A stretch of 64,000 nt of DNA, taken from positions 62,001-126,000 of the IMG/VR virus record IMGVR_UViG_3300028654_000001; one strand, 5' to 3'. Below, piece by piece: positions 31,052 through 64,000 of the stretch. The stretch's first letter is position 1; the number at the start of each line of letters is the position of its first letter. Both the position numbers and the translations under genes were made by a program. The notes under the pieces are model-generated. The model saw only the letters and a program-made list of their open reading frames with translations, was not told where the DNA came from and ran no database searches.

Positions 31052-31470
31052 ACTTACTCCATACACCGATCCGATGCCTCGTACCCCATCAGTACCGTGT
31101 GAATCAGACATTGTAGTTCACTGTTCTAATTAGAGTATTGTGACTAATAGAACCTACCAACAATCAGTTGTGTGCAAAACCAGGGCAAAAGACGCGAAGC
31201 GGGTCTAATGCAACGGTCATGCCATTAATGGTTTTCCATTTTCGTAGAATAATTCTCTTAGCCGATCATACTATTGGTTTACGAGGGTCCGGTCCTCAAC
31301 TTGGCTCTTCGGCCGTTGTTTTGATGAAGGGGAGTTAGGGGTGATTGGGCTCTTCGGCCTGGTTTAGGAGAAGGTTGATTGGGGGTTAAACTGACTCTGT
31401 GACCTGATTAGTATTAGGGGGAGGGTTCCTGTTCTTGGTACTATTCCTTCCCCTGTCCCTTGGCTCTCTG

Positions 31471-31683
31471 TCACTCGTTCTGGAGGATGCGTTGGAACCT
31501 GGTCAGGGGTTGATTCGATTCCAGATGGGGGCAAGGGTCGTAGTTGATGTTACGGCTGTTGGTGAGGCGGAGGAGGCCTTGGAGACCTACCCAGACGCGT
31601 TCACCCTTATCGCAGAGGGTGATGTTCTGGTCTTGGAGGGTGGGTTTGTTGTTCCAGTGGCACTTGTCACATTCGGTGGGCAT
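31471..31683 (-). CDS. Small Cys-rich protein with TRFQRIL tag
   Basis: MPTECDKC...CDKGER; paralogous to the N-terminus of 42372..42836. Confidence 0.75.
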   Translation of the reverse strand: MPTECDKCHWNNKPTLQDQNITLCDKGERVWVGLQGLLRLTNSRNINYDPCPHLESNQPLTRFQRILQNE

Positions 31684-31702
31684 GGTTGTGGGTCTTTAGG
31701 TT

Positions 31703-31804
31703 TCAGATGACTGGGTCCCGTTCGAATCTTGATGGGCGGTCTTGGTCTATCTCTTCCTCTAGGGGGAGTTGGTCAGGCACTGAGACAGTGTGGGGTAGGT
31801 TCAC
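31703..31804 (-). CDS. 33-aa peptide ending DRPSRFERDPVI (not in ORF track)
   Basis: Manual translation from GTG 31804; carries the RFERxxVI tag. Confidence 0.5.
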   Translation of the reverse strand: MNLPHTVSVPDQLPLEEEIDQDRPSRFERDPVI

Positions 31805-32415
31805 GAGCTAGGGGGTCACGACCTTTGACAATGAAGACTTGGTCGCTATCTTCTATTTCGAGGGTGGGCATACGGGGTCAGGTTTCAAGCAACCCAAGTT
31901 GAAGTTCTCTGGGTAGTCTTTGTAGAGTTGTTCCCATTCCTGGTGATGGCCGCAGGCAGGGGTACAGCGTTTGATGTTTTGAATTGGGTGTTTGGCACAT
32001 CGGGGGCAGGTGACATAGTTATGAAGCCAATCTGGGTTGGATTTGAAGGCCCACTTCGTGTAGGCATACCGGAGCTTTGGGAAGCGGCCAAGGGGCATCC
32101 AGACGAGGACATAGAAGGTGATGCAGCACCAAGGGAAGCCAGAGCATCGGCCGTGTCGGATGTCTAGGGAGAGCATCCTCAGCGTGTAGGGGATTGGCTT
32201 CATAGGCTTGACATCTTGTTCTTTCTTGTAGGCCCGGGGGCACAGAAGACGTAGACGACCATCATTATTACTTGGGTCTTCCAGGTGTAGTTCCCGAGGG
32301 GTAGTATTACGGTAAGCGACTCCAATAGTCCGAAGGCGAGGGTACCGATCCAGAACTTTCGATTCCTTTTGAGTTCTTGGAGTATGTGTAGGTACGGGTT
32401 CAAGTGATAGTTTTC

Positions 32416-32451
32416 GTTTCAATGAACGGGAAGATCCTATGCGCTTCCCAG
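32416..32451 (-). CRISPR. Solitary CRISPR repeat (type D), copy 1
   Basis: CTGGGAAGCGCATAGGATCTTCCCGTTCATTGAAAC: hairpin plus the array 3' end. Confidence 0.85.
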
Positions 32452-33345
32452 TGATTTAGTTAGTCAATTGAGAGTCAATGAGGTTCTTTCCACAGTTGGG
32501 GCATTTGGGGTGGGCTGTATTGGAGCAGCTCTGGCGGGTATGCACGGGGTCAGACCTTCTATCGTAGGTGGGAGAGCAGCATCCAGGAGAGCGCGAGGGC
32601 AAGGGTGAGGGTAACTGACCAGGTGAGGTAGTGGGGGCGTCTACAGTCCACCCAGAAGCCTTTGCAGGTGTACCCGAGGGACAGGTCTCCGGTTCCGACC
32701 CGGTGGGCACCACAGAGGGTCTTACCACATTGGACACAGGGGAGTGTTCCATCCGTGGAGCCGCAGACGGCACACGGTTTAGACTTCAAGGGGTGACCAT
32801 TGGTTTGGATAGGTTTAGAAACTCTTCTCGGGTGGGTTCGATCTTGATGACGGTTTCCATCGATTTCTGGAAGCCACCTCTATACTGTCGTAGTTTCATT
32901 GGGTGTCCTTTTGCTAGCAGAACTGGGAAAGGCACGGTTTGATACCGAGCTCTTTGTGAAGGCGGACGGGGACACCTGTTCCATCGCATCCGGGGCAGGT
33001 CTTGGAGCCACCATCTGGGGGTGAAGACGTATTCGTTGGTAGTCAGGTCACGGGAGAAGGAGCCCGTGGGGACAGATCCAAGGCAGTCATCGCAGAGTGG
33101 GCATTCAGGGTGTGGCATCAGGGTGAGCGATTCAGGTGCAAGCTGTTGTAGGAGCCGTCTGGGTTGACCGTCCATCGAGCTCCATGTTTACCGAGGTGAG
33201 GGCCTTCATGGCCTCTTGGTAGGTCGCACGGATCCATGTAGTGGACTTCCATGCATCTCGGGTGGTGCTGACAGCATATGAGGCAGAAGCCTGTATCATA
33301 CTCGTCTCGGCATTCCAGTTCTGGGTGGACAGGGCACTTCATGAT

Positions 33346-34143
33346 TTAGGCCAATCTGACAGCGAGAGAGGAGGATCCATCGGTGTCTTGTTGATCCCCG
33401 AACTGTTCTAGCTCTACTGATCCTTTGGGGACCTTGGGCTTATAGGTTCTGGGGGTGAGGGACTTTCGGAAGTGTCCTTCCTTTTTGTCCAGGTAGATCA
33501 GGGTATCGTCTCCTTGGGAGCAGACCAGCAGGTCATATTTGAGGGCTAGTTGGGCGATGGTTTTGGCATCGACGTCGATGGCTTGGCCGTCCATCCAACC
33601 CTCTTTGGCTAAGTCTTTGTCGATGTCGGTGGACTTTTTCCAGTTGATGATTCGGAAGACGGGTTGTTTTTTCGGTGTAGGGGCTGCCTTGATGATTTCG
33701 ACGGGTTTTTGAGGTAGTGGCACGGTATAGCTTGGGGTATCATCCATTGGGTTAACCTCATCGAGCAGGTCATCTGGTTCATCAGCGATGGCATTTGAGG
33801 AAGCGAGCCAGAGGTTGGGGTCCCAGGGGAAGTCACCGTTGAGGTGGCCGATCCATTCCTCTTTGGTGGCCATGCGCCATTGGCCCCTGAGTTCTTCCCC
33901 AGTGGAAGACTTGATTAGTTTCCCTCTCCAGATGTAGACGCCCTGGACGAGCGTACTGAGGTCTTTATCGAGGGAGGTATCGAGGGTACCGAGATCTTCT
34001 AAGTAATCTAGGGCAGGGCCAATATGGTCAAGGACGAGGCATCTTTGGTCTTGGACTACAACGAGGGCACGGTCTTTTGGGCAGGTGCCTTCTGGTTTGT
34101 AGACTCCACCTCTACTTTGTTCTACGCTTTGGATGGGAGTCAT
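33346..34143 (-). CDS. Hypothetical protein (MTPIQSVE...)
   Basis: The ORF-track start (TTG 34230) lies inside the solitary repeat; next ATG used. Confidence 0.65.
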   Translation of the reverse strand: MTPIQSVEQSRGGVYKPEGTCPKDRALVVVQDQRCLVLDHIGPALDYLEDLGTLDTSLDKDLSTLVQGVYIWRGKLIKSSTGEELRGQWRMATKEEWIGHLNGDFPWDPNLWLASSNAIADEPDDLLDEVNPMDDTPSYTVPLPQKPVEIIKAAPTPKKQPVFRIINWKKSTDIDKDLAKEGWMDGQAIDVDAKTIAQLALKYDLLVCSQGDDTLIYLDKKEGHFRKSLTPRTYKPKVPKGSVELEQFGDQQDTDGSSSLAVRLA

Positions 34144-34223
34144 AGGCTGATTCCGAGTTCCTGATGTAAGCGGACTAGGCACTTCATGATTTTCATGCCA
34201 ATTGGACAGCGAGGGCAGGGCCT

Positions 34224-34259
34224 GTTTCAATGAACGGGAAGGTCCTATGCGCTTCCCAG
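34224..34259 (-). CRISPR. Solitary CRISPR repeat (type D), copy 2
   Basis: 35/36 identical to 32416-32451. Confidence 0.85.
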
Positions 34260-34501
34260 TAATTTATCAATACTGGATAGACACTTATGAGTCAATGAGG
34301 TTATTCTCGGTGTACTTGCTTAGGTGTCCTACCGATATGCCAAGTCCTACATGGTTTTCATCAATGCTCTTCGTGAATGTTTGGGTTTAGGGCCAATTCC
34401 AGGTACAAAGGTTGAGGTAGAGGATCTCGAGTGGGACGCTTGGCCAGGGGGTGTTTGAGTGATTTTGGTGAGAACCCAAAAGATGGTATGTATCATTAGG
34501 C

Positions 34502-34768
34502 ATGGACATCCCAAACTTCGATGCAATGACTCCAGATGAGCTACGGGCCTTTTGGTCAAAGTGGCATGTGACCACCAAGAGGAATGCTGTTGAATTCACA
34601 GGTGACCGAGTGGATGCTCGTCAGATAATGGAGACTTTGGCTTGTTATGCCATCAACAAGTCTTGTGCCATGCGGCTTCGACTTGAGGGCAGGATAGCGA
34701 CCGCCTCTGGGTACGAGGCTGACTGTGAGCTTGCCTACAATCGACTTCCTGTCGACGTCCGGTGGTAG
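34502..34768 (+). CDS. Hypothetical protein, lone plus-strand gene
   Basis: Class-1 promoter 34468-34496, ATG 5 nt later. Confidence 0.7.
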   Translation: MDIPNFDAMTPDELRAFWSKWHVTTKRNAVEFTGDRVDARQIMETLACYAINKSCAMRLRLEGRIATASGYEADCELAYNRLPVDVRW

Positions 34769-35530
34769 TCAGTCTTCATCCTCGATGGAGTCAGGTTCGA
34801 AGGTAGCTGGATCGATGTCACTATCGGCCAGGGACTCGAGCTCCTCGAATAGTTCATCGCTGAGTACTTTGCGGGCGAAGCCTTTGAAGCGTTTGAGCTT
34901 AATTTCATAGGATGTGTTGTCTTGGTCGGCTTCTTGTCTACGGAGTTGACCGAGGGTGACTTGGATACCTTGGGACTCTTGTTTGAGGGCTTCAACTTGA
35001 GCTTCTAGCTTTCGATAGGCCAATGGGTCCATGTACTTATGGTACTTGATCACATCGGCTTTGGCCTTACCTAGTTTAAGTTTGGCTGAACGGAGGGCTT
35101 CATCCACCTCATGCTTGTGGAGCATCAATCGAGCCCGGTCACGTTCTAGTGGGTCATTGGCGTGTTTGAGGAGGGTAGCTTGTTGGGCCTCTTTGAGCTT
35201 CTGGTTTTGGGCCCGTTCTTGTTTCTCCTCCCTCATCTTACGACCTATTGATTGAGTCCAACGACCGGTTCCAACCTCTAGGGAGACACGGACAGTCAAG
35301 CCTGCGATACCCAGGGCTTGGGAAACGGCATCCTTTTCGAAGGGAGATCTGAGCTTTGGTAGTTGGAAATCCGATCCTTTGTGGGCATGAACGAGCATTG
35401 CTGTAGGGCGATTAGCGAACAAGACGATACGAACTGGGTTCTCTTCAGTGGGCATGTATCTGACTTTCTCTGTTAACCCGTCCCAATCTGGACGGGTTTG
35501 TTCTTTGGGGTTGTGCGTTTTATACCTCAC
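34769..35530 (-). CDS. Coiled-coil hypothetical protein
   Basis: 253-aa ORF. Confidence 0.7.
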   Translation of the reverse strand: MRYKTHNPKEQTRPDWDGLTEKVRYMPTEENPVRIVLFANRPTAMLVHAHKGSDFQLPKLRSPFEKDAVSQALGIAGLTVRVSLEVGTGRWTQSIGRKMREEKQERAQNQKLKEAQQATLLKHANDPLERDRARLMLHKHEVDEALRSAKLKLGKAKADVIKYHKYMDPLAYRKLEAQVEALKQESQGIQVTLGQLRRQEADQDNTSYEIKLKRFKGFARKVLSDELFEELESLADSDIDPATFEPDSIEDED

Positions 35531-51656: not shown

Positions 51657-51693
51657 CCGGTTTACGTTCGTTTGTTTGTTTATTTGTTTCAAT

Positions 51694-53848
51694 GTTTCAA
51701 TGAACGGGGAGCCCTTCGGCTCCCCATCTGTTCTAACTTGATAAACACCAACCAACATCGCCTGGACGTGGGCGTCTGCGTTTCAATGAACGGGGAGCCC
51801 TTCGGCTCCCCTCACACCGGTACTCACCGTACCACCGGTCGCGCATGTTTCAATGAACGGGGAGCTCTTCGGCTCCTCTCACCTCGTACAGGGCGTCGAG
51901 AACGCTTAACCTTGGGTGACTTCACCAAAGGTTGGTTTCAATGAACTGGAAGCCCTTCGGCTTCCCTCACCGTACTTCATCCCCACTATCCCTGTGGTTA
52001 CTGCTTTGTTTCAATGAACGGGGAGCTCTTCGGCTCCCCTCACCTTGCTGCAGTGCGACAATTCAAATCCGACGTTTCGTTTCAATGAACGGGGAGCTCT
52101 TCGGCTCCCCTCACCGAGAAAGGCTTGTTGTTTTGTCAATCCGTTCCCAAGTTTCAATGAACGGGGAGCTCTTTGGCTCCCCTCACTCAAGATGTCTGGG
52201 ACCGTTACCAGGACGCGGAATTGTTTCAATGAACGGGGAGCCGAAGGGCTCCCCTCACTTTTCGGGGTAATGGGCTCCGGTGATGCTTTTATCGTTTCAA
52301 TGAACGGGGAGCCCTTCGGCTCCCCTCACACACCTTACCGCGGATGAGCTGCAACAGTACTTAGGTGTTTCAATGAACGGGGAGCCCTTCGGCTCCCCTC
52401 ACCTACCTGAGGCCAGGCTCGAACCCGCAAAGGAGAGTTTCAATGAACGGGGAGCCCTTCGGCTCCCCTCACCAAATAGACTTGGTTCCCCCTCCTCTTC
52501 GATGGCTGTTTCAATGAACGGGGAGCCCTTCGGCTCCCCTCACCCGGTTTTTTTCCGCCTGAGCCCGCGGATGATGATGTTTCAATGAACGGGGAGCCCT
52601 TCGGCTCCCCTCACCGACCGCTTCTTTTACGGACATTTTGATGGTTTCAATGAACGGGGAGCCGAAGGGCTCCCCTCACGATACAGACGCACTGGTTGCC
52701 AGTGTTGCTGGGACACCGTTTCAATTAACGGGGAGCCGAAGGACTCCCCTCACTTCGAGGGCAAATCGGTCCGGGCATTTAGCAAGTCGCGTTTCAATGA
52801 ACGGGGAGCTTTTTGGCTCCCCTCACTAGTGTCGCAAGGGTATGGATTGGAAGAGCCAGTTGTGTTTCAATGAACGGGGAGCTCTTCGGCTCCCCTCACG
52901 AACATGAACTATTGAACGCTCTCCTCCTTAGGCTGTTTCAATGAACGGGGAGCTCTTCGGCTTCCCTCACTCAGAACCGCCCAACTCGAACTTGATGGGG
53001 TCAACACGTTTCAATGAACGGGGAGCCCTTCGGCTTCCCTCACGAAGCAGAACGCTATTACTCGTCGGAGCCCCAGAGGTTTCAATGAACGGGGAGCCCT
53101 TCGGCTTCCCTCACGAAGCAGAACGCTATTACTCGTCGGAGCCCCAGAGGTTTCAATGAACGGGGAGCCCTTCGGCTTCCCTCACCTTCAGTAGGTCCCT
53201 TGAGGTCCTTTTCCATTCACGGAGTTTCGCGTTTCAATGAACGGGGAGCCCTTCGGCTCCCCTCACTGCGTGAGGGGACATCTAGCGGTTCCTTCTTTGG
53301 ATGTTTCAATGAACGGGGAGCTCTTCGGCTCCCCTCACAATCACGTCGAGGTCACGTCCACAGAGTACTAGATCGTTTCAATGAACGGGGAGCTCTTCGG
53401 CTCCCCTCACGACAACGGCAGTAGTCTGCTTGTCTATCCAACCGGTTGTTTCAATGAACGGAGAGCTCTTCGGCTCCCCTTCGGCTCCCCTCACTGGTAA
53501 TTAGCGCCAAGCTTGGCCTTTGGATTGGGAGTTTCAATGAACGGGAAGCCCTTCGGCTCCCCTCACCAGGGCGGATCGAACGCGAGCCAAGGTGGATCGA
53601 TTGGTTTTAATGAACGGGGAGCTCTTCGGCTCCCTTACTGAATAGGTTTGCTAAACCTCATAATTTCAATGAGCAGACCTTTTGATGATCCTACCGAAGT
53701 TCGTTTCAAGTCATTCCAAGCCGCATATGTTTCAATGTTTCAATGTTTCAATGAACGGGGAGCCGAAGAGCTCCCCTCACCTAACATGGGGGACCCGTTG
53801 GATTGTGACTTCGTTTCAATGAACGGGGAGCTCTTCGGCTCCCCTCAC
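51694..53848 (-). CRISPR. CRISPR array, repeat A (GTGAGGGGAGCCGAAGGGCTCCCCGTTCATTGAAAC), about 29 repeats
   Basis: 36-nt repeats with mostly 29-40-nt spacers; many variant repeats; degenerate distal end at 51694. Confidence 0.97.
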
Positions 53849-53893
53849 TTATCAACTCGGCTACCCCTGAGCCTGTCAGATGGGGGTTTGTTT

Positions 53894-54366
53894 GTTTCAA
53901 TGAACGTGGGGATCTTTTGATGATCCCCACCAGGCGAGTGAGCACTACCTGCGATGGTTAGCACCCGTTTCAATGAACGTGGGGATCTTTTGATGATCCC
54001 CACGCATCAATGGGCAGACTTCGCCCTTCGTGAGGGGTTTTTCAATGAACGTGGGGATCTTTTGATGATCCCCACTATGAGTCACCCGGCGTTTTCGGAA
54101 CTGCTTAGGTGTATTTCAATGAACGTGGGGATCTTTTGATGATCCCCACGCACCTGCTAAATCGAAAGCCCCACCCATTGCAACGTTTCAATGAACGTGG
54201 GGATCTTTTGATGATCCCCACCTACGATCTCCATGCTGATGACTCATGCTCGGAATGGTTTCAATGAACGTGGGGATCTTTTGATGATCTCCACACACGG
54301 ACCCGCTATATTGTAGGACGCTGGATCGATCACCAATGAACGTGGGGATCTTTTGATGATCCCCAC
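53894..54366 (-). CRISPR. CRISPR array, repeat B (GTGGGGATCATCAAAAGATCCCCACGTTCATTGAAAC), 7 repeats
   Basis: 37-nt repeats contiguous with array A on the leader side. Confidence 0.95.
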
Positions 54367-54560
54367 ACCCCTAGTTTCAATAGAGTAAAGACATCTGTTA
54401 CTTATGATTCAGTTTGCGAGAGGTTAGCTACCTGTCTAGTAGGCGGGTAGCTCTATACCGACCCCCACTTCAGTAGATCAATTTTCAAGGACCAAGTGAT
54501 ATGCGAGAGGCTAGGGAGTATCTGTTACCACCTAGCCTCTCGCATACCCGAACTAGTACA
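54367..54560 (-). promoter_or_regulatory. CRISPR leader for arrays B/A
   Basis: ATGCGAGAGG...CCTCTCGCAT inverted repeat plus TTGAAAATTGAT, shared with the array C leader. Confidence 0.75.
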
Positions 54561-54600: not shown

Positions 54601-55128
54601 TTAGCCAGAACCAACCCCTTGATTTCCCCAAGTTATCTGATTTGGAGGGTGTACAATCATCGGAAGGTTATCTGGGTTACCATCGAACATCGACTCACCT
54701 ATTGGATACAGGGTGTCTTCCGAATAGCACAGTCCAATTTCATAATGATTACCACCAGCGCACCCGCCTCCAACACCGATTACTGCATAGACATGACCGA
54801 AGTCAATACCACTTGCTTGGATGAGTTTTTGAGCCCACCCAACCACAAGAGTTTTTTGGGCTTCATCAAAACCATCATCTAGGAAGCTTAGCTTGTCACC
54901 TTCGGGTATGACTCTAAGGTGAAACAACCGGTCTTTTCTTGAATCCACTAGTACCTGGGCCTCGTTGGTGAGCACCTCAGCTATTTCTGGAATGTTGGTT
55001 GTGTCAAGGTAGTAGACAACGGTGTCTGGTTCTCGACCAAAGTAGAATCCTTCATCGACCAGGTACTTGTCTGTTAGAAGCCAGTGTATTTGGATCTCAT
55101 TCATGACTTTTACCCTGTGTACAACCAC
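54601..55128 (-). CDS. Unknown protein, last gene of the cas operon
   Basis: Overlaps 55110..55349. Confidence 0.65.
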   Translation of the reverse strand: MVVHRVKVMNEIQIHWLLTDKYLVDEGFYFGREPDTVVYYLDTTNIPEIAEVLTNEAQVLVDSRKDRLFHLRVIPEGDKLSFLDDGFDEAQKTLVVGWAQKLIQASGIDFGHVYAVIGVGGGCAGGNHYEIGLCYSEDTLYPIGESMFDGNPDNLPMIVHPPNQITWGNQGVGSG

Positions 55129-55349
55129 CGGCTTGACTGGTCTGGGTTGCTACTGGGGGGTACCTGACCGTGGTCTAACTTCTCCTTGATCCTGCAGATG
55201 GCAATGCCAGCTGCGGCCTGTTGAGGGCGAACTCCAAGAGCTTTGGCCAACTGCTCAGTACTGAACTTTTTGTGCTTCTTGGCGAACTCCAAGACTCGGT
55301 TTGCATCCAATCGATCACTAGTTTTTGAACTCTTCTTACGCGCTGCCAT
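55110..55349 (-). CDS. Small winged-HTH protein
   Basis: FSTEQLAKALGVRPQQAAAGIA. Confidence 0.7.
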   Translation of the reverse strand: MAARKKSSKTSDRLDANRVLEFAKKHKKFSTEQLAKALGVRPQQAAAGIAICRIKEKLDHGQVPPSSNPDQSSRWLYTG

Positions 55350-55352
55350 TGA

Positions 55353-56105
55353 TTACCTATCCCATCTCGCCTTGTAGGCGGTTACCATTCCTGCTCTGAA
55401 GAACAGGCGAAGTGTTGCCATTTGTGAGAACGTCTTCCCATCACAATGGTAAAGCTGAAAGTTACTCATCAAGTCACTCACATTGGTAGCAGACCCAACC
55501 CACCCCTTGGATTTCAACTTATTGACCCAAAACTCAGCTTGTTTTTCTTTACTTCTGATCAGATCCCCACCCAACGTTGACTTTTGAACATAGGCATTCG
55601 TAATAACTGCACAGCACTTCAACGGCCCCTTGACTGTAGGTTCCACAACACCATCGACTATGCTGTCAATCTTGTCCACCCAATAATGGTGCCCGAGCTC
55701 GCCGGTGTCGTCAAAATTGAATATCCCGATTGGTCTAGTTGGTGTATTTTCACACAACTTTGAGGCCCGAGCATAACCGTCTGGTTGATACCCATACCTG
55801 AAAAGTATGTCTTTACCAACAGGGCCGCTGTACAGATCAAGATTCCTCTCGTACTCTAACCCTCTAAGTCGACAAATGACCTCTAGGTTGCAGTCAACTC
55901 CAATGAAGTCTCTGTCATCGGTCAGATACTTTCGAATCATGTTAAAAAACTGCCAACCTGAGTAACCTAGTAACTCATAGTAGGAGCAGATTAACTTACC
56001 TCCTGACCAGAGAGGCTTCAGCCTTGGATCTAGGAAAAATGTGCGGTTCATTCGCCACCAGGGGTCCTTGTCAAAAGGGCCTGATTCAGGATTACTCTTC
56101 TTCAT
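55353..56105 (-). CDS. Cas-associated protein, possible SAM-dependent methyltransferase fold
   Basis: YYELLGYSG (motif I-like), FIGVDCN (motif II-like), IFNFDDTG; ATGA-coupled to the helicase. Confidence 0.45.
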   Translation of the reverse strand: MKKSNPESGPFDKDPWWRMNRTFFLDPRLKPLWSGGKLICSYYELLGYSGWQFFNMIRKYLTDDRDFIGVDCNLEVICRLRGLEYERNLDLYSGPVGKDILFRYGYQPDGYARASKLCENTPTRPIGIFNFDDTGELGHHYWVDKIDSIVDGVVEPTVKGPLKCCAVITNAYVQKSTLGGDLIRSKEKQAEFWVNKLKSKGWVGSATNVSDLMSNFQLYHCDGKTFSQMATLRLFFRAGMVTAYKARWDR

Positions 56106-58501
56106 TGGTCGCTCGACTCCCCGCTAACTAGAGCACAGGCCTCTTCAAGAGTTAGACCTTCAGGTAGTTTTTTACCAACTAACCTGCGTAGGTACTTATA
56201 GACAGGGCACCTTCTTCCATGAGACTCCCTGAAGGCTTCTCTATTAGCAGCCACCACCTCATGGTAGTGATCAGTCCACTTATCAAGTTTCTCTCTCCAC
56301 AACTCACCGTACTTTCGTTTGATGGCCCATTGACGGAGCCCTCCAACAAGTACAGGCCCAAAAGCACCCCTCTTTAGGAACGAGTGGCAAGTGGCAAATG
56401 TATAGGTACTACTAGGAGTCAACTTATCCAGTATGTCCGGGCATCTCTCATTGAGTTCAAGAAAGTTATCATAGTATTGTTCCATGTCACTCATGGACTT
56501 TGGTATACACTTTGAGGATATACCACCAAACTTAGAACCCCAGTAAACTAAGTCAACAGATCCAAAGTTATGAAGGGAGTCCGATTGAGTCTTTATCTTG
56601 AACTCCTCACACAAGGCATCCAGTTCTTCTAGTAGGTCTGGGTTATTTGGATCCCTAGCTCGGGTCCTGCGGATGAAAGCCCCATCTAACTTGGGGGAGT
56701 CAGTACTCTCCATCAGACGTTGTATAATAGCCTCATTCAAAGCCTGATCATCAACCTCGATGTACTTTTTCCCGGCTTCCTCAACTTTAGGGATGGCAAC
56801 AAACTTCTCATACACTCTGGCCAACTTCCTGGGGTTGACATCAGCGTCATCCTCTGTTTTGACTGACTCCCACCACTTAAGGGCTTCTCCCACCAGTAAC
56901 CTGGCGTGAAGAGCCTCCTTTGGTTTCACCTGATTCTTTAGGATTGTGTCGGTAACATCGTGATTGAGCTCATTCAGTATGCCGTGCTTCTTGAACACAC
57001 TAATAATCAAGGATATGTTAGAAAGTCCCACCATGGTGGCCAGGGTACTGAGAAGACCCATCAAATATGGGCTACTCTCTTTTTGAGGCGCTGTGATGTA
57101 TACTTGTTTCGACACCCCTTGCCATTTCTCTGGGTAACCCTTGATAGTAGGTACCGCTGTTTTACTGTAGTCACGCTTTCCATTCTCATCCAACTCTATA
57201 TCTAGACGTAGTCTCATGAGACGACCAGGCAACTGTGCTGATAGTACCTCTGACTGTGGGATACCAATGGATATCCCAAGGCACCTGCAAGGGGAATCCA
57301 GCCCTTCAGTAGCTCTCTGGATGGCTAGTATGACAGGATTTTTTTGTATGTCAGAGTAAGTTACACCAGTTATCCTCTCTTTTTCAATGAGATCAGTCAA
57401 CTTATTGTTGCCGCCGAATCCTATGGCATCAACAACATCGACTCCAAACGGCTCCTTCTTGAAAGCCTCTCGTTGTGCAACCCTGAGATCCTCATTAGTG
57501 CTAGCTGGGCAAAAACAACAAGACCTAGAAACTGTAGGTACACGGCCATGCCTATCCCAAATGTCGACCACCTCTTGTGCTAAACCACCGATTTTTTCCG
57601 CCTTAGCCATCAGCATTTCCTGATCAGACTCGGAATCTGGTAGATCTCTCAAGGTGAGATTATCGCTCTGAACTAGTTCAAATTCTAGCCTTTCCGGCGC
57701 AAAACCCCTCAGCATCATTTCAGGGAGAGTTCTCTCAAGAACTAGTGTATCCTTAATGCTTACTTGGCTACCATCCCTCCAAAACCCCGAAGTATATTCA
57801 TTCCACGTTATCTCACGAGTATTTGGTGGCTTCCTGTCAGCTCTGAAGTTCGTTGCGGTAAGCCCACAGCTTGCTGTTGAACCTTGTTCAATTAGATTAG
57901 TTTCAAGATCTCCAAGATCAGTACCCTTAGTGGCTGCGTGGTGCTTCTCATCAGGAATCAGGAGAAGCCTTTTTTTGGAGCCCCTCTTAAACTCTTCCAT
58001 CAGTACTTTTTCGGCTTTTACAAACAACTGATGAGTTACCACGAGAATATTAGACTTCTTTGGAGCTGTAAGAAACCTCCCTAACACATCAAAGAGCTTA
58101 GGTGTATCATCGGAAGTAACTGCTACGACTTCAGGTGTCGTTCGCACCACCCCATTCTTACCTACCCTCTTGTACTTTTCCTGCTTGTACTTTTTCGGAT
58201 TGTCCTTTTCCGGTTTACCCCTAAATTGCTTAACAATGTTACTTTGAGGGGCTACTATCAAGATGTGTGTGAAGGGGTTGTTCTCGGAAGCTAGTATCTC
58301 GGAAGCAATAACCTTGGCTTCTAATGACTTTCCAAGACCAGTACCCCACCAAAGTACCACCCGCTCCTGACCCGCTAGGAGAGCTTGAACGGCCTTACCC
58401 ATATCCTCGTCTTGATAGTATCGTAGGGGTTTTGGAGCTTCTTCGTCACAAGGCGTCAAGGTCCTGACTTGCTTGTATTGTAATGTCTTTGGCATGGGCA
58501 C
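56102..58501 (-). CDS. SF2 DExH helicase without HD nuclease domain (not canonical Cas3)
   Basis: GTGLGKS (Walker A), IPDEKHH (Walker B), GLTAT, ATEGLDSP, QLPGRLMR; helicase core starts within about 25 aa; about 300-aa unknown C-terminus. Confidence 0.85.
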   Translation of the reverse strand: MPMPKTLQYKQVRTLTPCDEEAPKPLRYYQDEDMGKAVQALLAGQERVVLWWGTGLGKSLEAKVIASEILASENNPFTHILIVAPQSNIVKQFRGKPEKDNPKKYKQEKYKRVGKNGVVRTTPEVVAVTSDDTPKLFDVLGRFLTAPKKSNILVVTHQLFVKAEKVLMEEFKRGSKKRLLLIPDEKHHAATKGTDLGDLETNLIEQGSTASCGLTATNFRADRKPPNTREITWNEYTSGFWRDGSQVSIKDTLVLERTLPEMMLRGFAPERLEFELVQSDNLTLRDLPDSESDQEMLMAKAEKIGGLAQEVVDIWDRHGRVPTVSRSCCFCPASTNEDLRVAQREAFKKEPFGVDVVDAIGFGGNNKLTDLIEKERITGVTYSDIQKNPVILAIQRATEGLDSPCRCLGISIGIPQSEVLSAQLPGRLMRLRLDIELDENGKRDYSKTAVPTIKGYPEKWQGVSKQVYITAPQKESSPYLMGLLSTLATMVGLSNISLIISVFKKHGILNELNHDVTDTILKNQVKPKEALHARLLVGEALKWWESVKTEDDADVNPRKLARVYEKFVAIPKVEEAGKKYIEVDDQALNEAIIQRLMESTDSPKLDGAFIRRTRARDPNNPDLLEELDALCEEFKIKTQSDSLHNFGSVDLVYWGSKFGGISSKCIPKSMSDMEQYYDNFLELNERCPDILDKLTPSSTYTFATCHSFLKRGAFGPVLVGGLRQWAIKRKYGELWREKLDKWTDHYHEVVAANREAFRESHGRRCPVYKYLRRLVGKKLPEGLTLEEACALVSGESSDQ

Positions 58502-58561
58502 TCACCGAGTCAAGGGAGCAACTAAGGCCCCCTTGACTCCAAATGCTAACAGATCTGATGG

Positions 58562-59500
58562 TTAACCGTCAACTATTTCGATCTCAATCCCCTTTTCGGA
58601 AAGGCCGGAGGTGTCGATTGTGATGTCGTAGTCGTCAACCGAGCTCGGAGGGGGTAGCTCCTTGCCCGTCTGGTTCTTTCTGGTAACTTTGACTCTCCGC
58701 ATCAGGCTTGCGGCCGATTCCTTGCCGTTTGCATCAGGGTGCCGAAAGACAATCATCTTGTGGAAGTGATTGTTGGGCCTGGTTGTGGACCGGAATAGGT
58801 CATAGGACTCCCGAGCGTAGTCAAAAAAGTCAGTGAGATCACCGTAGGTGGTTCCCAAACGAGAGGCGCAGAACGGATTGACGTGGATGTTGGTTCGGAA
58901 CAACCCAAAGGATATGACTGGGATCTTACCCATGGTTCGCTCCTTGTCGATATCCTCCTCCTTGGACACGGCGCCGCGGGTGATGGACAGGTTCATGATC
59001 TCGACACGTTCAGCAGTTTCCCCGAAGCACACTTGGATGGGTCCAGTCACTTGTTCGTTGATCGGATTTGTCAGGGCTCCACCGAACCAGCAAACATCAA
59101 TGTACTTAGTCATCATTTTTACAGCGGCTTCCTTCACATCTCGAGATGACATCTTCGGGTCCGACTCTTTATCACCCTTGGCGCCTTTACCCTTGGCGCC
59201 CTTGGTGTCGGAATAGAGATCCCCACAAGCCTCCTTCATCTTGGTGGATAGGGGTAGACCACCGCGAGCGATGTAGACCTCCCTTCCATGAAGTTGTGCC
59301 GTAGCACGCACCCAGCTCTTGAAACACATGGGTGTCTTGATTCCGTTACCTGTTGACGGATCAACTCGTTGCATGTTGTCGTTATCTGGATCTCCATTGC
59401 CGTTGGATAGCTTGGAGTAGTCAATAAAGACAACATCATGCCGGCGATCAATAACTTTTTCACGGTCAAACTGTTTCATAGTATACATCCGATCTTTCAT
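58562..59500 (-). CDS. cas7: Type I-C Cas7 (Csd2)
   Basis: SNGNGDPDNDNMQRVDP, YIDVCWFG, QVTGPIQVCF, SITRGAV..E, ERTMGK. Confidence 0.93.
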   Translation of the reverse strand: MKDRMYTMKQFDREKVIDRRHDVVFIDYSKLSNGNGDPDNDNMQRVDPSTGNGIKTPMCFKSWVRATAQLHGREVYIARGGLPLSTKMKEACGDLYSDTKGAKGKGAKGDKESDPKMSSRDVKEAAVKMMTKYIDVCWFGGALTNPINEQVTGPIQVCFGETAERVEIMNLSITRGAVSKEEDIDKERTMGKIPVISFGLFRTNIHVNPFCASRLGTTYGDLTDFFDYARESYDLFRSTTRPNNHFHKMIVFRHPDANGKESAASLMRRVKVTRKNQTGKELPPPSSVDDYDITIDTSGLSEKGIEIEIVDG

Positions 59501-59596
59501 CTAATTGAATGGGGACTAACCCCAGTTCATGTAAGTTACTCTTGCTTCAATTATCGGGATACAAAGTCTGTACCCCACACATCCTAATTCAGGGGT

Positions 59597-61258
59597 TTAC
59601 TCTAGCCCTTCTTCAGCAGCCGTCGCTTTGATTTTCTCAGAGCGGTAGCGGTAGAGGCCTGCGTTCTGATGTTCATACCCTAGGACAACTAAGCCCTTTT
59701 GAAGGTTGTTTAGGTTACCTCTCGGAATGTTTATTACCTCTGAGGCAACTCTTCCAAAGTGCTCTCTGTATTCCTGAGGGGTTCGCTCACGATAGAGATC
59801 TGGGTTCATGTTTGCGAAGCAACTCTGGGGATTTGCCAAAAAGGTTCGGATTTCCTTGCACTCAGGAACTTTATTGCCTTTGTGGTAGCTGATTCGCATA
59901 TGGTGAAAAGAAGCGATGTACCGCCCCCAAGCATACGCAAGATCACCACACAAGTCTTCGGAGATGGATCCATCCATGAGTCTGATCTTGTCCTCCAACT
60001 CATCCTCGTTGTTTTCCTTCTTGAATGTAATCGACGTCGCCATTACTGTTAGTTCTTTCTGGGCAAGCCCGTGTTCTCGGTAGTAATTTATTTCAGTCCA
60101 CTTGGTGAAGTTAGCTAAGTAAAGGTCACTTGATATGCTGAATAGCTGTTGAGGGATTCGTCCTCCTGTCAGCAAAGCCCACATCGTGTCCTGAATCACT
60201 GATTCAGGGTAGATCGGTTCAAACTTCCCGTTCGAAGTTTCCCCCAGATCACACATGAGCCACCGTAGGTTGACTCGCTGTGGGTTCTGGTACCTCACCT
60301 GCTTCTGAAACAGGAGTAGGTTGTCACGTATCTTACCGACGGTAGTGATAGCCATGTTTCGGATCGAGATGCGAGACATGCTGGGGCGAATCTGAACCAT
60401 ATGAATAGGATCGTTGGTCGACTCAAGATCGGTCAGTATCTTCCAACAGCACTCAACAGCATCCTTGTCCGAGTACCCCATCCCGAGGATTCCCTGAGCC
60501 GCTTCAATGATTGGGTGACTGATTCCGGTAACTGGGATCATCACTATTGATGACTCGTTGGTGTGCACCGCATTGTTTGCAAGCGCGTAACTGAGCCCTG
60601 TCACAACAGTGATTGCTTCCCCAACCTCAATCATGAAGTTGTGCCCTTGCTTCATCCCGAGGAACTTATTGGCCCCTTCGTTAACCGAATGGAGCTTCCC
60701 GTTAGCCCTAACTAAACCAATTCCATTTACTTCGGGTTGGAGTCGAGCTTTTGACCCACCTTTAGCTCCAGACATTAGACTTGGTTCGGTCAGGCAGTCC
60801 GGGTTACCATCTTTCCCAAGGATAGTCAGTTTCTGACTTTGAAACAGCTTGTTGCAAGCTTCGTAACAGGCCGATCCAATGGATTCTAGACTACCAACTG
60901 GTGTACCCTTGAATGTCAGAACAACCCAGTTGGTGGGTTCGATCTCAGGATACTTCAGCGATCCCTCCAAGAACTTGATAGCTGCTTGATACAAGGTCCT
61001 GTGCTTTTTGAAGATCGGTAGGTGAACTTCCCAGAAGACAGACTCAGGGTCGAGTACGACCTTCTTGGAGTCATAGCCCGAACATGGATAGAGAGACGCT
61101 TCTGTGGCACGCCCCGTAATGGCCTTCTGAGGCATCACGAAGGTCTTGTGCTTGGTTGCGACTCCAGTGGTCAGCTCCAAGGTAAAAACATTCTTACGAG
61201 TCTCTGGGGTGGCATCAACTCGACTTCCTAGGGATTGGAGATCCCAATAGAGGTTCAT
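59597..61258 (-). CDS. cas8c: Divergent type I-C Cas8c (Csd1) large subunit
   Basis: KLHSVNEGA..FLG..QG.N, AYAWGR, QKGLVVLGYEHQ; lies between cas5 and cas7. Confidence 0.8.
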   Translation of the reverse strand: MNLYWDLQSLGSRVDATPETRKNVFTLELTTGVATKHKTFVMPQKAITGRATEASLYPCSGYDSKKVVLDPESVFWEVHLPIFKKHRTLYQAAIKFLEGSLKYPEIEPTNWVVLTFKGTPVGSLESIGSACYEACNKLFQSQKLTILGKDGNPDCLTEPSLMSGAKGGSKARLQPEVNGIGLVRANGKLHSVNEGANKFLGMKQGHNFMIEVGEAITVVTGLSYALANNAVHTNESSIVMIPVTGISHPIIEAAQGILGMGYSDKDAVECCWKILTDLESTNDPIHMVQIRPSMSRISIRNMAITTVGKIRDNLLLFQKQVRYQNPQRVNLRWLMCDLGETSNGKFEPIYPESVIQDTMWALLTGGRIPQQLFSISSDLYLANFTKWTEINYYREHGLAQKELTVMATSITFKKENNEDELEDKIRLMDGSISEDLCGDLAYAWGRYIASFHHMRISYHKGNKVPECKEIRTFLANPQSCFANMNPDLYRERTPQEYREHFGRVASEVINIPRGNLNNLQKGLVVLGYEHQNAGLYRYRSEKIKATAAEEGLE

Positions 61259-61905
61259 GCTGACCTCCTATTGAGCCGCTTGATTCCCATGTTTCGAACA
61301 ACGTCCCAAGAAGGATATCGAACAACCCCGTGTGACATGGTCAACGGTGCAAAGTAATACGGTGTTTCTGGATCATCCCAATCAACATCATAGAACATCA
61401 GGCCGAAGTCAGGCGAGATATCGACTGGGTTTGCAGGCTCTTCAGCGGCTTCCAAGTAACACTTGCACTCGGAGGTTCCAAAGTAGATGCGCCGTCGTTC
61501 AACACCCATCCGAAGACGATCTCGGAACATCTTGTCGAACTTTGGGATATTGTCCTCAGGGCCGGCTTTACTTGAAAGCTTGAATTGGCACTCAATAATG
61601 CAATCGTAATTCCGTAGATAAGTCGACGTTCGTTGAGTCCGGTCCTCTTCAATAATGATAGGTTTGTTTGGGGAGTTTGAGTCAAAGCTCAGTTCGTTGA
61701 GAAGCATAGGGTGGTATACTGGCTTACTTTGGAGGGATAGACTGAGGATCCTCCAATCAATTGCCTTGTGCCCGCATATCCCCCTTGGAAGGGCAACCCC
61801 CGCTGAGTGAGATGGGATCAGTGAACTGATCCTCTCTGACCTGAATGCTGGTTGGTTGAACAATGCATAGGGTCCCCATGCATGTATCCTGTATATTGGT
61901 GACAT
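61255..61905 (-). CDS. cas5: Type I-C Cas5 (Cas5c/Cas5d)
   Basis: WGPYALFNQP..RSER, IEEDRTQR, YFGTSEC, DFGLMFYDVD, MSHGVV. Confidence 0.92.
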   Translation of the reverse strand: MSPIYRIHAWGPYALFNQPAFRSERISSLIPSHSAGVALPRGICGHKAIDWRILSLSLQSKPVYHPMLLNELSFDSNSPNKPIIIEEDRTQRTSTYLRNYDCIIECQFKLSSKAGPEDNIPKFDKMFRDRLRMGVERRRIYFGTSECKCYLEAAEEPANPVDISPDFGLMFYDVDWDDPETPYYFAPLTMSHGVVRYPSWDVVRNMGIKRLNRRSA

Positions 61906-62059: not shown

Positions 62060-62283
62060 TACCAGCTACATTCGAATGGATCTGCATCAGTTATGCGAGA
62101 GGTTAGGTGCCACTAAAAGTAAGGCAACCTCTCGCATACTAGCTAGGTCTTTGAAAATTGATATTAATCAATTAGCTAGCAGCTACCAATTGCACGAGTT
62201 TAACTGAGTTACCTGAAGTTCGAAACGTAGTTCTCGAGATCAATCCTGTAACTGGTTGGACTCTCTAGTTCTATAGGTGACTA
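62060..62283 (+). promoter_or_regulatory. CRISPR leader for array C
   Basis: ATGCGAGAGG...CCTCTCGCAT...TTGAAAATTGAT at 62093-62162. Confidence 0.75.
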
Positions 62284-63986
62284 CTGGGGATCCTTGATTG
62301 GATCCCCGTTCATTGAAACTCTCGATACAATGCTCCCAGAGGAAGCCTCTCGGTCAGCTGGGGATCCTTGATTGGATCCCCGTTCATTGAAACAGCTTCG
62401 CCACGATGACCGTTTGCGCCTCCCCGTCTTCTGGGGATCCTTGATTGGATCCCCGTTCATTGAAACCCGTAAAGGCGTCAACGTCATCTCGATTCCCATT
62501 CTTGCTGGGGATCCTTGATTGGATCCCCGTTCATTGAAACCTTTCAGTGCCGGTTCTCAGAGATGGGGAGAAGGACCTGGGGATCCTTGATTGGATCCCC
62601 GTTCATTGAAACGATTGTGTGCAGAACGTCGTCGAGCGCGGTGCGTCCTGGGGATCCTTGATTGGATCCCCGTTCATTGAAACACGGAAACTTGCGGAAG
62701 GTCGAATAAAGGGTGAGAACTGGGGATCCTTGATTGGATCCCCGTTCATTGAAACAATGTTGCTGTTTTCCCATCGCCACTCGCAGCGGTCTGGGGATCC
62801 TTGATTGGATCCCCGTTCATTGAAACCATCTCGTTGACCATGGTCCCACCCACTACGAGTGGCTGGGGATCCTTGATTGGATCCCCGTTCATTGAAACCA
62901 CGCTCTGAGAGGGGCATTCGTTACAGCAATGATGGCTGGGGATCCTTGATTGGATCCCCGTTCATTGAAACAAACGAGTCACGGCAATTGCACCGCGTAC
63001 TGGCCCGAGGTCTGGGGATCCTTGATTGGATCCCCGTTCATTGAAACAGGAGCTCTGCGTCTTGACGTAGGAGGCCTTCAGGCTGGGGATCCTTGATTGG
63101 ATCCCCGTTCATTGAAACCAAGTCCTCAAGTTCCTGCGATTCGCTCCGATCATTCTCTGGGGATCCTTGATTGGATCCCCGTTCATTGAAACGTCAATAA
63201 CCTAATGATTCGGTTCGCAGGCTCTGGGCCTGGGGATCCTTGATTGGATCCCCGTTCATTGAAACGAAGAGTATCATCGCTCGAAGTTTCACCTGTAGCA
63301 GGCTGGGGATCCTTGATTGGATCCCCGTTCATTGAAACGATCCACTGAAGACCCTGACTCCTCGGACTTAGGGCTGGGGATCCTTGATTGGATCCCCGTT
63401 CATTGAAACGGAGCCCTACCTAGTCTGTTCAAGAGCGAGGGAGAGCTGGGGATCCTTGATTGGATCCCCGTTCATTGAAACTGGAACCTTCTTCTGCTCT
63501 ACCGACAGACCGTTGAGCAGCTGGGGATCCTTGATTGGATCCCCGTTCATTGAAACGGCCCTCTTGGGCTGACACCCGGACCCATAAAGATCTGGGGATC
63601 CTTGATTGGATCCCCGTTCATTGAAACTTGGGTTTGATTTTGACTATCCGCTCTCCATAGCAGCTGGGGATCCTTGATTGGATCCCCGTTCATTGAAACG
63701 AGACCAAGACAAGGATTATTCCTCCTCGTCCAGTCTGGGGATCCTTGATTGGATCCCCGTTCATTGAAACACGTCCATGAGTCGCTTGGTCTGATTGGCG
63801 CAAAGTAGCTGGGGATCCTTGATTGGATCCCCGTTCATTGAAACTGGTTGAGGTGAAATCGGTTCGGGCAGCTCGTTGGCTGGGGATCCTTGATTGGATC
63901 CCCGTTCATTGAAACACTCAGCTCCCGAACTCGTTCGAGTCGCTCACGGACTGGGGATCCTTGATTGGATCCCCGTTCATTGAAAC
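62284..63986 (+). CRISPR. CRISPR array, repeat C (CTGGGGATCCTTGATTGGATCCCCGTTCATTGAAAC), 24 identical repeats, likely continues past the window
   Basis: Invariant 36-nt repeats with 34-40-nt unique spacers. Confidence 0.98.
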
Positions 63987-64000
63987 GACAGTAGCAACGC

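What the first reader, a model, noticed from the sequence alone, without database searches (positions are those of the whole stretch)
32416..34300. Two solitary CRISPR repeats about 18 kb from the cas locus, inside an ordinary gene cluster
Seen: 36-nt units at 32416 and 34224 (35/36 identical) have their own GGGAAG/CTTCCC hairpin and the same CGTTCATTGAAAC end as all three arrays. They are oriented with the minus-strand genes, and each is preceded by AACCTCATTGACTC (contains TTGACT). I see no second repeat one spacer away. Known: solitary repeat units can act as RNA anti-CRISPRs (Racrs) or as crRNA-like regulators, and Cas5c processes I-C repeats. Inference: these are single-guide units, Racr decoys against a host I-C system, or Cas5-cut processing sites that trim the 5' ends of the downstream mRNAs.
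Basis: partly seen in the sequence, partly recalled or inferred. Interest (0 to 1): 0.78.

Follow-up and report, generated by a model that had tools for sequence, protein, structure and literature searches.

The report
Two orphan CRISPR repeats in huge phage
A 512-kb soil phage that carries its own nuclease-less type I-C CRISPR system also has two stray copies of a CRISPR repeat inside an ordinary gene cluster; they are real and look cuttable by the phage's own Cas5c, but nothing yet shows what they do, and the nearest relatives lack them.

Summary
Two 36-nt units (32416-32451 and 34224-34259, read on the minus strand) are 35/36 identical. They are the only such units outside the arrays in the complete 512,571-bp phage genome. 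Each has a 6-bp GGGAAG/CTTCCC hairpin followed by the 13-nt tail CGTTCATTGAAAC, which all three arrays share.

The cognate system is the phage's own: cas5c-cas8c-cas7-helicase, with no Cas1 or Cas2. No array with this tail exists in 185,579 species genomes or in IMG/VR.

All differences from the array repeats lie in the upper stem and loop, positions that Cas5c is reported to tolerate. So the units are plausible Cas5c substrates.

- AACCTCATTGACTC is not a sigma-70 promoter. It belongs to a duplicated unit of 70-79 nt counted from that block.
- The "spacers" are local gene sequence and have no PAM-flanked target in the phage.
- The two nearest relatives keep the flanking genes and the same cas operon but have no such unit. 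The units sit at synteny breakpoints.

Best reading (about 0.4): they are processing or Cascade-loading sites for the phage's own system inside a polycistronic mRNA. A functionless recombination relic is nearly as likely. No RNA data were available.

The parts
32416..32451 (-). SRU1: 36-nt solitary CRISPR repeat with a 6-bp GGGAAG/CTTCCC stem, a 10-nt loop and the tail GTTCATTGAAAC
34224..34259 (-). SRU2: second copy, 35/36 identical to SRU1 (one loop difference)
32452..32485 (-). Upstream part of the SRU1 unit: TAAATCA (32452-32458), 13-nt variable stretch, conserved block AACCTCATTGACTC (32472-32485). The block matches the 5' handle TTCATTGAAAC at 8 of 11 positions
34260..34302 (-). Upstream part of the SRU2 unit: TAAATTA (34260-34266), 22-nt variable stretch, AACCTCATTGACTC (34289-34302). 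Homology with relative L057 stops just upstream of this block
32380..32415 (-). Pseudo-spacer S1. It contains the TTG start and first codons of the 67-aa ORF, which is homologous to the N-terminus of a 113-aa gene in L057
34188..34223 (-). Pseudo-spacer S2. It is partly a duplicate of the junction between the 265-aa and 74-aa genes at about 33330-33385, and is followed by an 18-codon ORF (34140-34196) that overlaps the 265-aa gene start
   Evidence: (family D19)
33346..34143 (-). 265-aa ORFan gene downstream of SRU2. It has homologues in relatives (70% and 92% identity) that have no SRU upstream
32559..32789 (-). 76-aa zinc-ribbon ORF upstream of SRU1, equivalent to the C-terminal half of the single 113-aa gene in L057
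32200..32403 (-). 67-aa two-TM ORF directly downstream of SRU1, equivalent to the N-terminal half of the same L057 gene. The two halves are in permuted order around SRU1
54601..61905 (-). The phage's own type I-C variant operon: cas5c 61255-61905, cas8c 59597-61258, cas7 58562-59500, ResIII helicase 56102-58501 (no HD domain found), unknown 250-aa and 175-aa genes. There is no Cas1 or Cas2 anywhere in the genome
51674..54366 (-). Arrays 1 and 2, with two hairpin types and the same tail CGTTCATTGAAAC
62267..64000 (+). Array 3, which continues to about 64720 beyond the window. It has a third hairpin type with the same tail and is the array repeat closest to the SRUs (29/36)
59499..59580 (-). Degenerate repeat-like mini-unit between cas8c and cas7: hairpin plus GATAATTGAAGC (59544-59580), 19 nt, then a second hairpin plus ATTCAATTAGAT (59499-59524). 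It is conserved in relatives L097 and L098

Best explanation
The two units are orphan copies of the phage's own type I-C repeat family. They are embedded, in the sense orientation, in a long minus-strand transcription unit made of small ORFan genes. [quoted passage not shown] Each cut would give an upstream mRNA that ends in a hairpin and a downstream mRNA that begins with the 11-nt crRNA 5' handle. Cas5c/Cas7 could then assemble over the first 35 nt or so, which hold the TTG start of the 67-aa ORF (13 nt after SRU1) or the ATG of the 18-codon ORF (28 nt after SRU2). The expected effect is Cas-dependent uncoupling or tuning of the flanked genes, with some titration of Cas proteins as a side effect. 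It would not be guided targeting. Shown: identity, uniqueness, orientation, a cognate cas operon in the same genome, and changes confined to positions tolerated by Cas5c. Inferred: transcription, cleavage, and any effect on expression.
For: The tail and stem base are identical to those of all three arrays. The differences lie only in the upper stem (compensated) and the loop. Cas5c is reported to read the cut site and the downstream handle, not the loop (PMC8524198). Cas5c, Cas8c and Cas7 are encoded 20-27 kb away. The handle is specific to this phage lineage: no array with it exists in 185,579 species genomes or in IMG/VR. The relative's arrays use the same or a 1-nt variant handle. Divergence within the duplicated unit is uneven: 2 differences in 57 positions of the two conserved blocks, against 4-5 in 13 plus a 9-nt indel between them (Fisher p about 0.009). 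The flanks are at chance identity. This points to constraint on the repeat. Both units are intergenic and co-directional with the genes. The only phage-type promoter motif upstream on that strand is at 38727, and sigma-70 promoter-like and terminator-like sites are not enriched. That fits co-transcription. A third, degenerate repeat-like unit lies inside the cas operon and is conserved in relatives. So repeat-like hairpins inside mRNAs recur in this lineage.
Against: There is no RNA evidence at all. The units are absent from the nearest relatives, which keep the flanking genes and the same cas operon. They sit at rearrangement breakpoints among gene fragments. The hairpin is much weaker than in the array repeats, and in the SRU2 context an alternative fold competes with it. 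Cas5c has Phe where the catalytic His normally is; the Lys is kept, and such replacements are reported in the family, so activity is not assured. Identical contigs from four other samples show only that the same strain is present, not that selection acts.
Confidence: 0.4

Rival explanations
1. The units are a functionless relic or a recombination module. A roughly 75-nt 'gene end + repeat' module was copied during rearrangement of a hyperplastic gene island. It persists because it is harmless, or because direct repeats promote cassette shuffling, as PeSL motifs do in T4-type phages.
For: The units are absent from relatives L057, L058 and L059. SRU2 lies exactly where about 6 kb present in L057 is missing. 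SRU1 lies between the permuted halves of a gene that is single in L057. Both are preceded by gene-end remnants (NLIDS), and S2 is a duplicated gene junction. The region 31.2-35 kb is a compositional outlier: the inter-SRU segment has GC 54.1%, in the top 0.6% of genome windows, and skew in the top 1%. No promoter, terminator or target was found.
Against: The repeat and the 14-nt block are far better conserved than the stretch between them. The handle is intact at 13 of 13 positions in both copies. The hairpin differs from every array repeat by compensated changes, so this is not a fresh copy from an array. No deletion or circle joint between the two copies appears in contigs from four samples, although the power of that test is low.
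Confidence: 0.3
2. The units are Racr-like decoys. The solitary repeats soak up Cas5c/Cas7 of a host (or competing-phage) type I-C system whose repeats share the handle.
For: Solitary repeat units in viruses can inhibit CRISPR-Cas. A type I-C example, RacrIC1, lies 11 nt downstream of a gene and is co-transcribed with it (PMC10651486). The phage lacks Cas1 and Cas2 yet has about 70 spacers. Huge phages in that state may rely on host Cas proteins with similar repeats (PMC7162821). If so, a compatible host system could exist.
Against: The decoy would poison the phage's own Cascade to the same degree. No array with this handle exists in 185,579 species genomes. No strong promoter was found. No acr or aca gene is recognisable nearby. 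The units are not conserved in relatives.
Confidence: 0.13
3. The units encode crRNA-like regulatory guides. Either the RNA after the repeat (handle + S1 or S2) acts as the guide, or a short guide is formed by the degenerate handle-like block CTCATTGACTC, a 20- or 29-nt stretch, and the repeat hairpin. The guide would direct the nuclease-less Cascade to silence a promoter.
For: The system has a helicase in place of Cas3 and no HD domain, so repression rather than cleavage is plausible (PMC7162821). The left block matches the 5' handle at 8 of 11 positions, with a chance probability of roughly 0.03-0.04 by my own estimate. The architecture resembles the mini-unit in the cas operon. Viral crRNA-like regulators are described (10.1101/2024.10.29.618823).
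Against: None of S1, S2 or the two short stretches matches the phage genome beyond what shuffled controls give, and there is no TTC+seed match longer than 9 nt. None matches the cas promoter region. S1 and S2 are local coding or duplicated sequence. No hairpin precedes the left block, so Cas5c could not create that 5' end. The host genome is unknown.
Confidence: 0.1

Closest known systems
Viral solitary repeat units / RNA anti-CRISPRs (Racr; RacrIC1 for type I-C), PMC10651486
   Same: A single CRISPR-repeat-like unit in a phage genome, with repeat-like sequence and hairpin. It lies just downstream of a gene and in the same orientation.
   Different: Here the matching arrays and cas genes are in the same phage genome. 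No host repeat is known to match, no promoter or acr neighbour was found, and a decoy would hit the phage's own complex.
crRNA-like regulatory RNAs (CreA/crlRNA; viral Cracr), 10.1101/2024.10.29.618823 and 10.1101/2024.12.27.630466
   Same: Repeat-derived elements outside arrays that load Cas effectors for regulation. The effector here lacks a nuclease domain. There may be a degenerate upstream handle followed by a short spacer.
   Different: No partially complementary PAM-flanked target was found in the phage. The second repeat is absent (downstream) or reduced to an 8/11 handle-like block (upstream).
Type I-C variant CRISPR systems of huge phages (no Cas1/Cas2, helicase instead of Cas3), PMC7162821
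   Same: The cas operon in this window has exactly that make-up, and the genome is a 512-kb phage.
   Different: I found no solitary repeats away from the arrays in the passages of that paper that I read.
PeSL promoter-stem-loop motifs of T4-type phages, PMC2839356
   Same: A short repeated intergenic motif with a stem-loop that flanks small variable ORFs and coincides with insertion, deletion and replacement breakpoints between relatives.
   Different: There are only two copies, no demonstrable promoter, and the stem-loop is a CRISPR repeat. No recombination products were seen.

Membership tests
Type I-C CRISPR repeat (this phage's repeat family) | Unit of about 36 nt with a stem-loop and an 11-12-nt 3' tail ending in ATTGAAAC, identical to the tail in the cognate arrays | tested here: met
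   the tail is 13/13 identical to all three arrays and a hairpin is present (-9.0 kcal/mol)
Type I-C CRISPR repeat (this phage's repeat family) | Occurs in a regularly spaced array with spacers | tested here: not met
   both are single units 1808 nt apart, with no full repeat 30-40 nt away
Type I-C CRISPR repeat (this phage's repeat family) | Cognate Cas5c endonuclease present and catalytically competent | tested here: inconclusive
   cas5c is present. The triad Lys is kept but His is replaced by Phe. PMC8524198 reports that only the Lys is invariant.
Racr (RNA anti-CRISPR) | Solitary repeat unit in a virus or plasmid that mimics a CRISPR repeat in sequence and structure | tested here: met
Racr (RNA anti-CRISPR) | Mimics the repeats of the host's CRISPR-Cas system | tested here: inconclusive
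   The host is unknown. No array with tail GTTCATTGAAAC exists in 185,579 species genomes. The match is to the phage's own arrays.
Racr (RNA anti-CRISPR) | Not associated with cas genes in the element that carries it (as SRUs are described in PMC10651486) | tested here: not met
   a full cas5c-cas8c-cas7 operon lies 20-27 kb away in the same genome
Racr (RNA anti-CRISPR) | Own promoter within about 250 bp upstream | tested here: inconclusive
   there is no sigma-70-type site on the minus strand. The host's promoter type is unknown. SRU2 alone has a TGATAAATT stretch, read directly from the sequence, that resembles an extended -10 element.
Racr (RNA anti-CRISPR) | Inhibits CRISPR interference | not testable with these tools
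   This needs an interference or repression assay.
crlRNA / CreA / Cracr regulatory guides | Spacer-like segment flanked by (degenerate) repeats | tested here: inconclusive
   There is no downstream second repeat. The upstream block matches the handle at 8/11 positions, lies 20 or 29 nt before the repeat, and has no hairpin.
crlRNA / CreA / Cracr regulatory guides | Partial, PAM-flanked complementarity to a promoter (of a cas gene, a toxin or a defence gene) | tested here: not met
   nothing beyond the shuffled controls in the phage genome. The host genome could not be tested.
PeSL-like mobile regulatory cassette motif | Repeated intergenic promoter + stem-loop motif at indel or replacement breakpoints between related phages | tested here: inconclusive
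   The breakpoint position is met. A promoter is not shown, and there are only two copies.
PeSL-like mobile regulatory cassette motif | Recombination products (deletions or circles) between copies | tested here: not met
   no joints in contigs from four other samples. The data are low-depth contigs only, so this is weak evidence.

The most novel reading that the evidence does not exclude
A phage-borne, nuclease-less type I-C system uses stray copies of its own repeat as Cas5c-dependent cut-and-cap sites inside polycistronic mRNAs. The copies include the conserved mini-unit between cas8c and cas7. They would set the stability or translation of neighbouring genes, making them a natural counterpart of the synthetic Csy4/Cas6 operon insulators.
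Probability: 0.2. Interest if true: 0.75.

Novelty: new variant of a known kind. Interest (0 to 1): 0.5.

Why it matters
Solitary repeats in viruses have so far been interpreted as weapons against a host's CRISPR system. Here the only known cognate system belongs to the phage itself, and it lacks both an adaptation module and a nuclease. If the units are processed, CRISPR repeats would be serving as cis-acting RNA elements for a virus's own gene expression or for dosing its Cas proteins. If they are relics, they show how repeat modules spread and mark recombination hot spots in huge-phage genomes. In either case the test is simple: express Cas5c with an SRU transcript and map the RNA ends.

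Tried and rejected
- Exact and N-padded searches for the unit in IMG/VR found nothing. The 15-nt tail gave only chance hits without hairpins.
- In the JGI metagenome contigs, only the phage's own record holds the units.
- Searches for an array-spaced handle in species genomes and in IMG/VR returned five non-CRISPR tandem repeats and nothing else.
- GenBank phages have no similarity to the region.
- No RNA run was listed.
- Contigs from four other samples are identical, so they say nothing about selection.
- Spacers of this phage against the loci held and against its own genome, and spacers of relatives against this genome, gave no meaningful matches.
- Rfam has no match.
- Pfam, PHROGs and the protein atlas give the flanking genes no function.
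- The Cas5c-RNA complex prediction was not folded by the tool and counts as no evidence.
- I could not build a covariance model of the repeats, because MAFFT put the stems of the different repeat types out of register. I used a custom hairpin+core scan instead.
- The idea that the SRUs exactly bound a compositional island was rejected. The anomaly spans about 31.2-35 kb, wider than the SRU pair.
- The gene remnants upstream of the units have no parent gene elsewhere in the genome.
- Two weak hits for the 29-nt stretch (TTC + 9 nt at genome position 340119; 19/29 with TTC at 40074) were judged to be chance after allowing for multiple tests.
Full report
**What the window is.** The window is bases 62001-126000 of a complete 512,571-bp virus record with direct terminal repeats, assembled from a rhizosphere metagenome.

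It carries a type I-C variant CRISPR-Cas locus on the minus strand:
- cas5c at 61255-61905
- cas8c at 59597-61258
- cas7 at 58562-59500
- a ResIII-type helicase at 56102-58501, with no HD domain detected
- two unknown genes of 250 and 175 aa

No Cas1 or Cas2 profile matches anywhere in the genome. [quoted passage not shown]

Three arrays flank the operon. Arrays 1 and 2 lie at 51674-54366 on the minus strand. Array 3 starts at 62267 on the plus strand and runs to about 64720. Their repeats have three different hairpins but the same 13-nt 3' end, CGTTCATTGAAAC.

**The observation.**
- In the functional (minus-strand) orientation they read CTGGGAAGCGCATAGGA[T/C]CTTCCCGTTCATTGAAAC.
- They differ at one loop position.
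- A scan of the whole genome with up to three mismatches finds only these two.
- Looser scans (handle with mismatches plus any hairpin; ATTGAA core plus a G-rich hairpin) find no further full unit outside the arrays.
- The predicted hairpin has six G-C/A-U pairs plus a closing U-G pair, a 10-nt loop, and an energy of -9.0 kcal/mol.
- That is clearly weaker than the array repeats, at -15.6 to -20.7 kcal/mol.
- The closest array repeat is that of array 3, at 29/36.

**Anatomy of the duplicated unit.** Homology between the two loci is not limited to the repeat.
- It ends exactly at the repeat's 3' end.
- Upstream it runs through TAAAT[C/T]A, then a variable stretch of 13 nt at SRU1 and 22 nt at SRU2, then the block AACCTCATTGACTC (14/14 identical).
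- Beyond these limits identity is at chance level: 16/51 upstream and 12/50 downstream.
- The block occurs nowhere else in the genome, so it is not a general promoter motif.
- No sigma-70-type promoter is called on the minus strand near either unit.
- In frame, the block encodes the last residues (NLIDS) of short gene remnants that have no parent gene elsewhere in the genome.
- Divergence within the unit is uneven. The two conserved blocks show 2 differences in 57 positions. The stretch between them shows 4-5 differences in 13 positions plus a 9-nt indel (Fisher p about 0.009).
- That pattern suggests constraint (or gene conversion) on the repeat and on the 14-nt block.
- The block also resembles the 5' handle (CTCATTGACTC against TTCATTGAAAC, 8/11), and it lies 20 or 29 nt before the repeat.
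- I estimate the chance probability of that resemblance at a few percent, so I treat it as a lead only.

**The "spacers" are local gene sequence.** S1, the 36 nt after SRU1, contains the TTG start and first codons of a 67-aa two-TM ORF. S2 is partly a duplicate of the junction between the 265-aa and 74-aa genes about 850 nt downstream (family D19). Neither S1, S2 nor the two short upstream stretches matches the phage genome better than shuffled controls do. No TTC plus seed match longer than 9 nt exists. A guide function against the phage's own DNA is therefore not supported. The host genome is unknown and could not be searched.

**Relatives.** The 265-aa protein downstream of SRU2 has two homologues in 5.8 billion proteins.
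- The first is 70% identical. It lies on a 297-kb JGI contig (locus L057) and on a Logan contig (L058).
- The second is 92% identical and lies on a 1-kb ENA contig (L059).

None of these loci has a repeat-like unit near the gene. In L059 the upstream gene abuts the homologue directly.

The 297-kb relative carries the same cas operon (Cas7 88% identical). It also has two arrays with the same two hairpin families and the handle GTTCATTGAAAC or GATCATTGAAAC. So the SRUs are missing from a phage that does have the cognate system.

Gene order is collinear from window 38082 down to about 34305. Collinearity then breaks immediately upstream of the SRU2 unit, where about 6 kb of L057 is absent.

At SRU1, a gene that is single in L057 (113 aa, two TM helices plus a zinc ribbon) is present as two ORFs in permuted order. 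The C-terminal half (32559-32789) lies upstream of SRU1, and the N-terminal half (32200-32403) lies just downstream.

The surrounding 31.2-35 kb is a compositional outlier. The inter-SRU segment has GC 54.1%, in the top 0.6% of genome windows, and |GC skew| 0.19, in the top 1%. The anomaly is wider than the SRU pair.

Exact-pattern searches found the SRU stem-plus-tail nowhere else in IMG/VR or in 241 million metagenome records.

A more distant relative (Cas7 45% identical, L100) has array repeats that begin TTGGGAAG and end CTTCCGTAGTTGAAAC. So the SRU's hairpin type does exist as an array repeat in the wider clade.

Contigs from four other rhizosphere samples are identical across both units and show no deletion joints. 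This shows the same strain, not selection.

**Whose repeats are they?** The 12-nt tail at array spacing was found in no array in 185,579 bacterial and archaeal species genomes, nor in IMG/VR. The five hits were non-CRISPR tandem repeats. The only known cognate machinery is therefore the phage's own, or that of its close relatives.

Published work on Cas5c covers the following (PMC8524198):
- It recognises the cut site and the downstream handle.
- Loop and 5'-overhang changes are tolerated.

The SRUs keep the three G-C pairs at the stem base, the CT 5' overhang of array 3, and the whole tail. All their differences are in the upper stem (compensated) and the loop. On sequence grounds they should be substrates.

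The phage Cas5c aligns with solved Cas5c proteins (E about 1e-19). It keeps the triad Lys but has Phe in place of His. The same paper says only the Lys is invariant, so catalytic competence remains open.

**Transcription context.** The window contains a strong repeated motif, GTGAGATC-N7-CTCA-N3-GTA[A/G]TA[C/T]T. Most copies end a few nucleotides before a start codon. There are 13 copies on the plus strand and 3 on the minus strand. The only minus-strand copy upstream of the SRUs is at 38727. Sigma-70 promoter-like and terminator-like sites are not enriched in the cluster. I infer that the SRUs lie inside a long polycistronic RNA. No RNA run was listed, so this is untested.

**A third repeat-like element.** Between cas8c and cas7 (59499-59580, minus strand) lies a degenerate repeat: a hairpin plus GATAATTGAAGC, then 19 nt, then a second small hairpin plus ATTCAATTAGAT. 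It is conserved in L097 and L098, with a G-U to G-C change in the first stem. Its 19-nt stretch has no PAM-flanked match in the genome or in the cas promoter region. It shows that repeat-like hairpins inside mRNAs recur in this lineage, and it deserves separate study.

**Weighing the explanations.** I rank them as follows.
- **Own-system processing or loading sites in mRNA (about 0.4).** This fits the intact tail, the cognate Cas5c, the orientation, the intergenic position, the uneven conservation and the parallel inside the cas operon.
- **Relic or recombination module (about 0.3).** This fits the absence from relatives, the breakpoint positions, the weak hairpin and the surrounding gene debris. 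PeSL motifs of T4-type phages (PMC2839356) are the nearest described analogue.
- **Racr-type decoy (about 0.13).** This is known for type I-C (RacrIC1, PMC10651486). Here it would hit the phage's own complex, and no host match is known.
- **Regulatory guide (about 0.1).** This lacks any target.
- **Seed for new arrays.** This is unlikely without Cas1 and Cas2.

None of these can be settled without RNA or biochemical data.

**Verdict.** These are real solitary repeats, cognate to the phage's own system and probably processable. They are lineage-specific and of unproven function. This is a new variant of a known kind (viral solitary repeat units) and of moderate interest.

Noticed in passing
window 59499-59580 (minus strand), also L097:9900-9990 and L098:2725-2815: A degenerate repeat-like mini-unit lies between cas8c and cas7: hairpin + GATAATTGAAGC, 19 nt, then a second hairpin + ATTCAATTAGAT. 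It is conserved in the relative, with a G-U to G-C change in the stem. No PAM-flanked target was found.
   Followed up: partly
window plus strand: 9537, 11410, 12985, 14657, 20461, 22272, 23228, 23747, 23981, 24842, 25586, 26764, 27694; minus strand: 5013, 5393, 38727: A repeated motif GTGAGATC-N7-CTCA-N3-GTA[A/G]TA[C/T]T, most copies ending a few nucleotides before a start codon. It is probably a phage-specific promoter giving leaderless or near-leaderless mRNAs.
   Followed up: partly
window 62080-62150 (plus) and 54470-54540 (minus); also L097 about 7340-7400: The leaders of arrays 2 and 3 share a long hairpin (TATGCGAGAGG...CCTCTCGCATA) followed by CTTTGAAAATTGAT. The relative has it as well.
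   Followed up: no
window 54601-61905 and the whole genome: The type I-C variant has a ResIII helicase and no HD domain, and the 512-kb genome has no Cas1 or Cas2. Yet the arrays hold about 70 spacers. None of them matches the phage itself or the relatives' loci held here.
   Followed up: partly
window 32200-32403 and 32559-32789: A two-domain gene (two TM helices + zinc ribbon) is a single 113-aa ORF in relative L057. Here it is two ORFs in permuted order, one on each side of SRU1.
   Followed up: partly
window about 31200-35000: A compositional island. The inter-SRU segment has GC 54.1% and GC skew +0.19, among the most extreme 1% of windows in the genome.
   Followed up: partly
window about 51690-51710 and 53725-53745 (minus-strand array ends): The trailer ends of the array-1 sub-arrays finish with tandem copies of the 8-nt ATTGAAAC (two or three in a row). 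Array 1 also mixes repeats whose loop is inverted (CGAAG against TCTTC).
   Followed up: no
window 2313, 2762, 11809, 29762, 30171 and 15833, 39936, 40436, 41715, 44421: Two families of roughly 43-nt repeats (core GGATCCTYTCAAAYCGAGT) are scattered through the window, apparently at gene ends. Their nature is unknown.
   Followed up: no
L100:4500-7500: A distant relative (Cas7 45% identical) also mixes two hairpin types with one handle (GTAGTTGAAAC) in a single long array. One type begins TTGGGAAG, like the SRUs.
   Followed up: no
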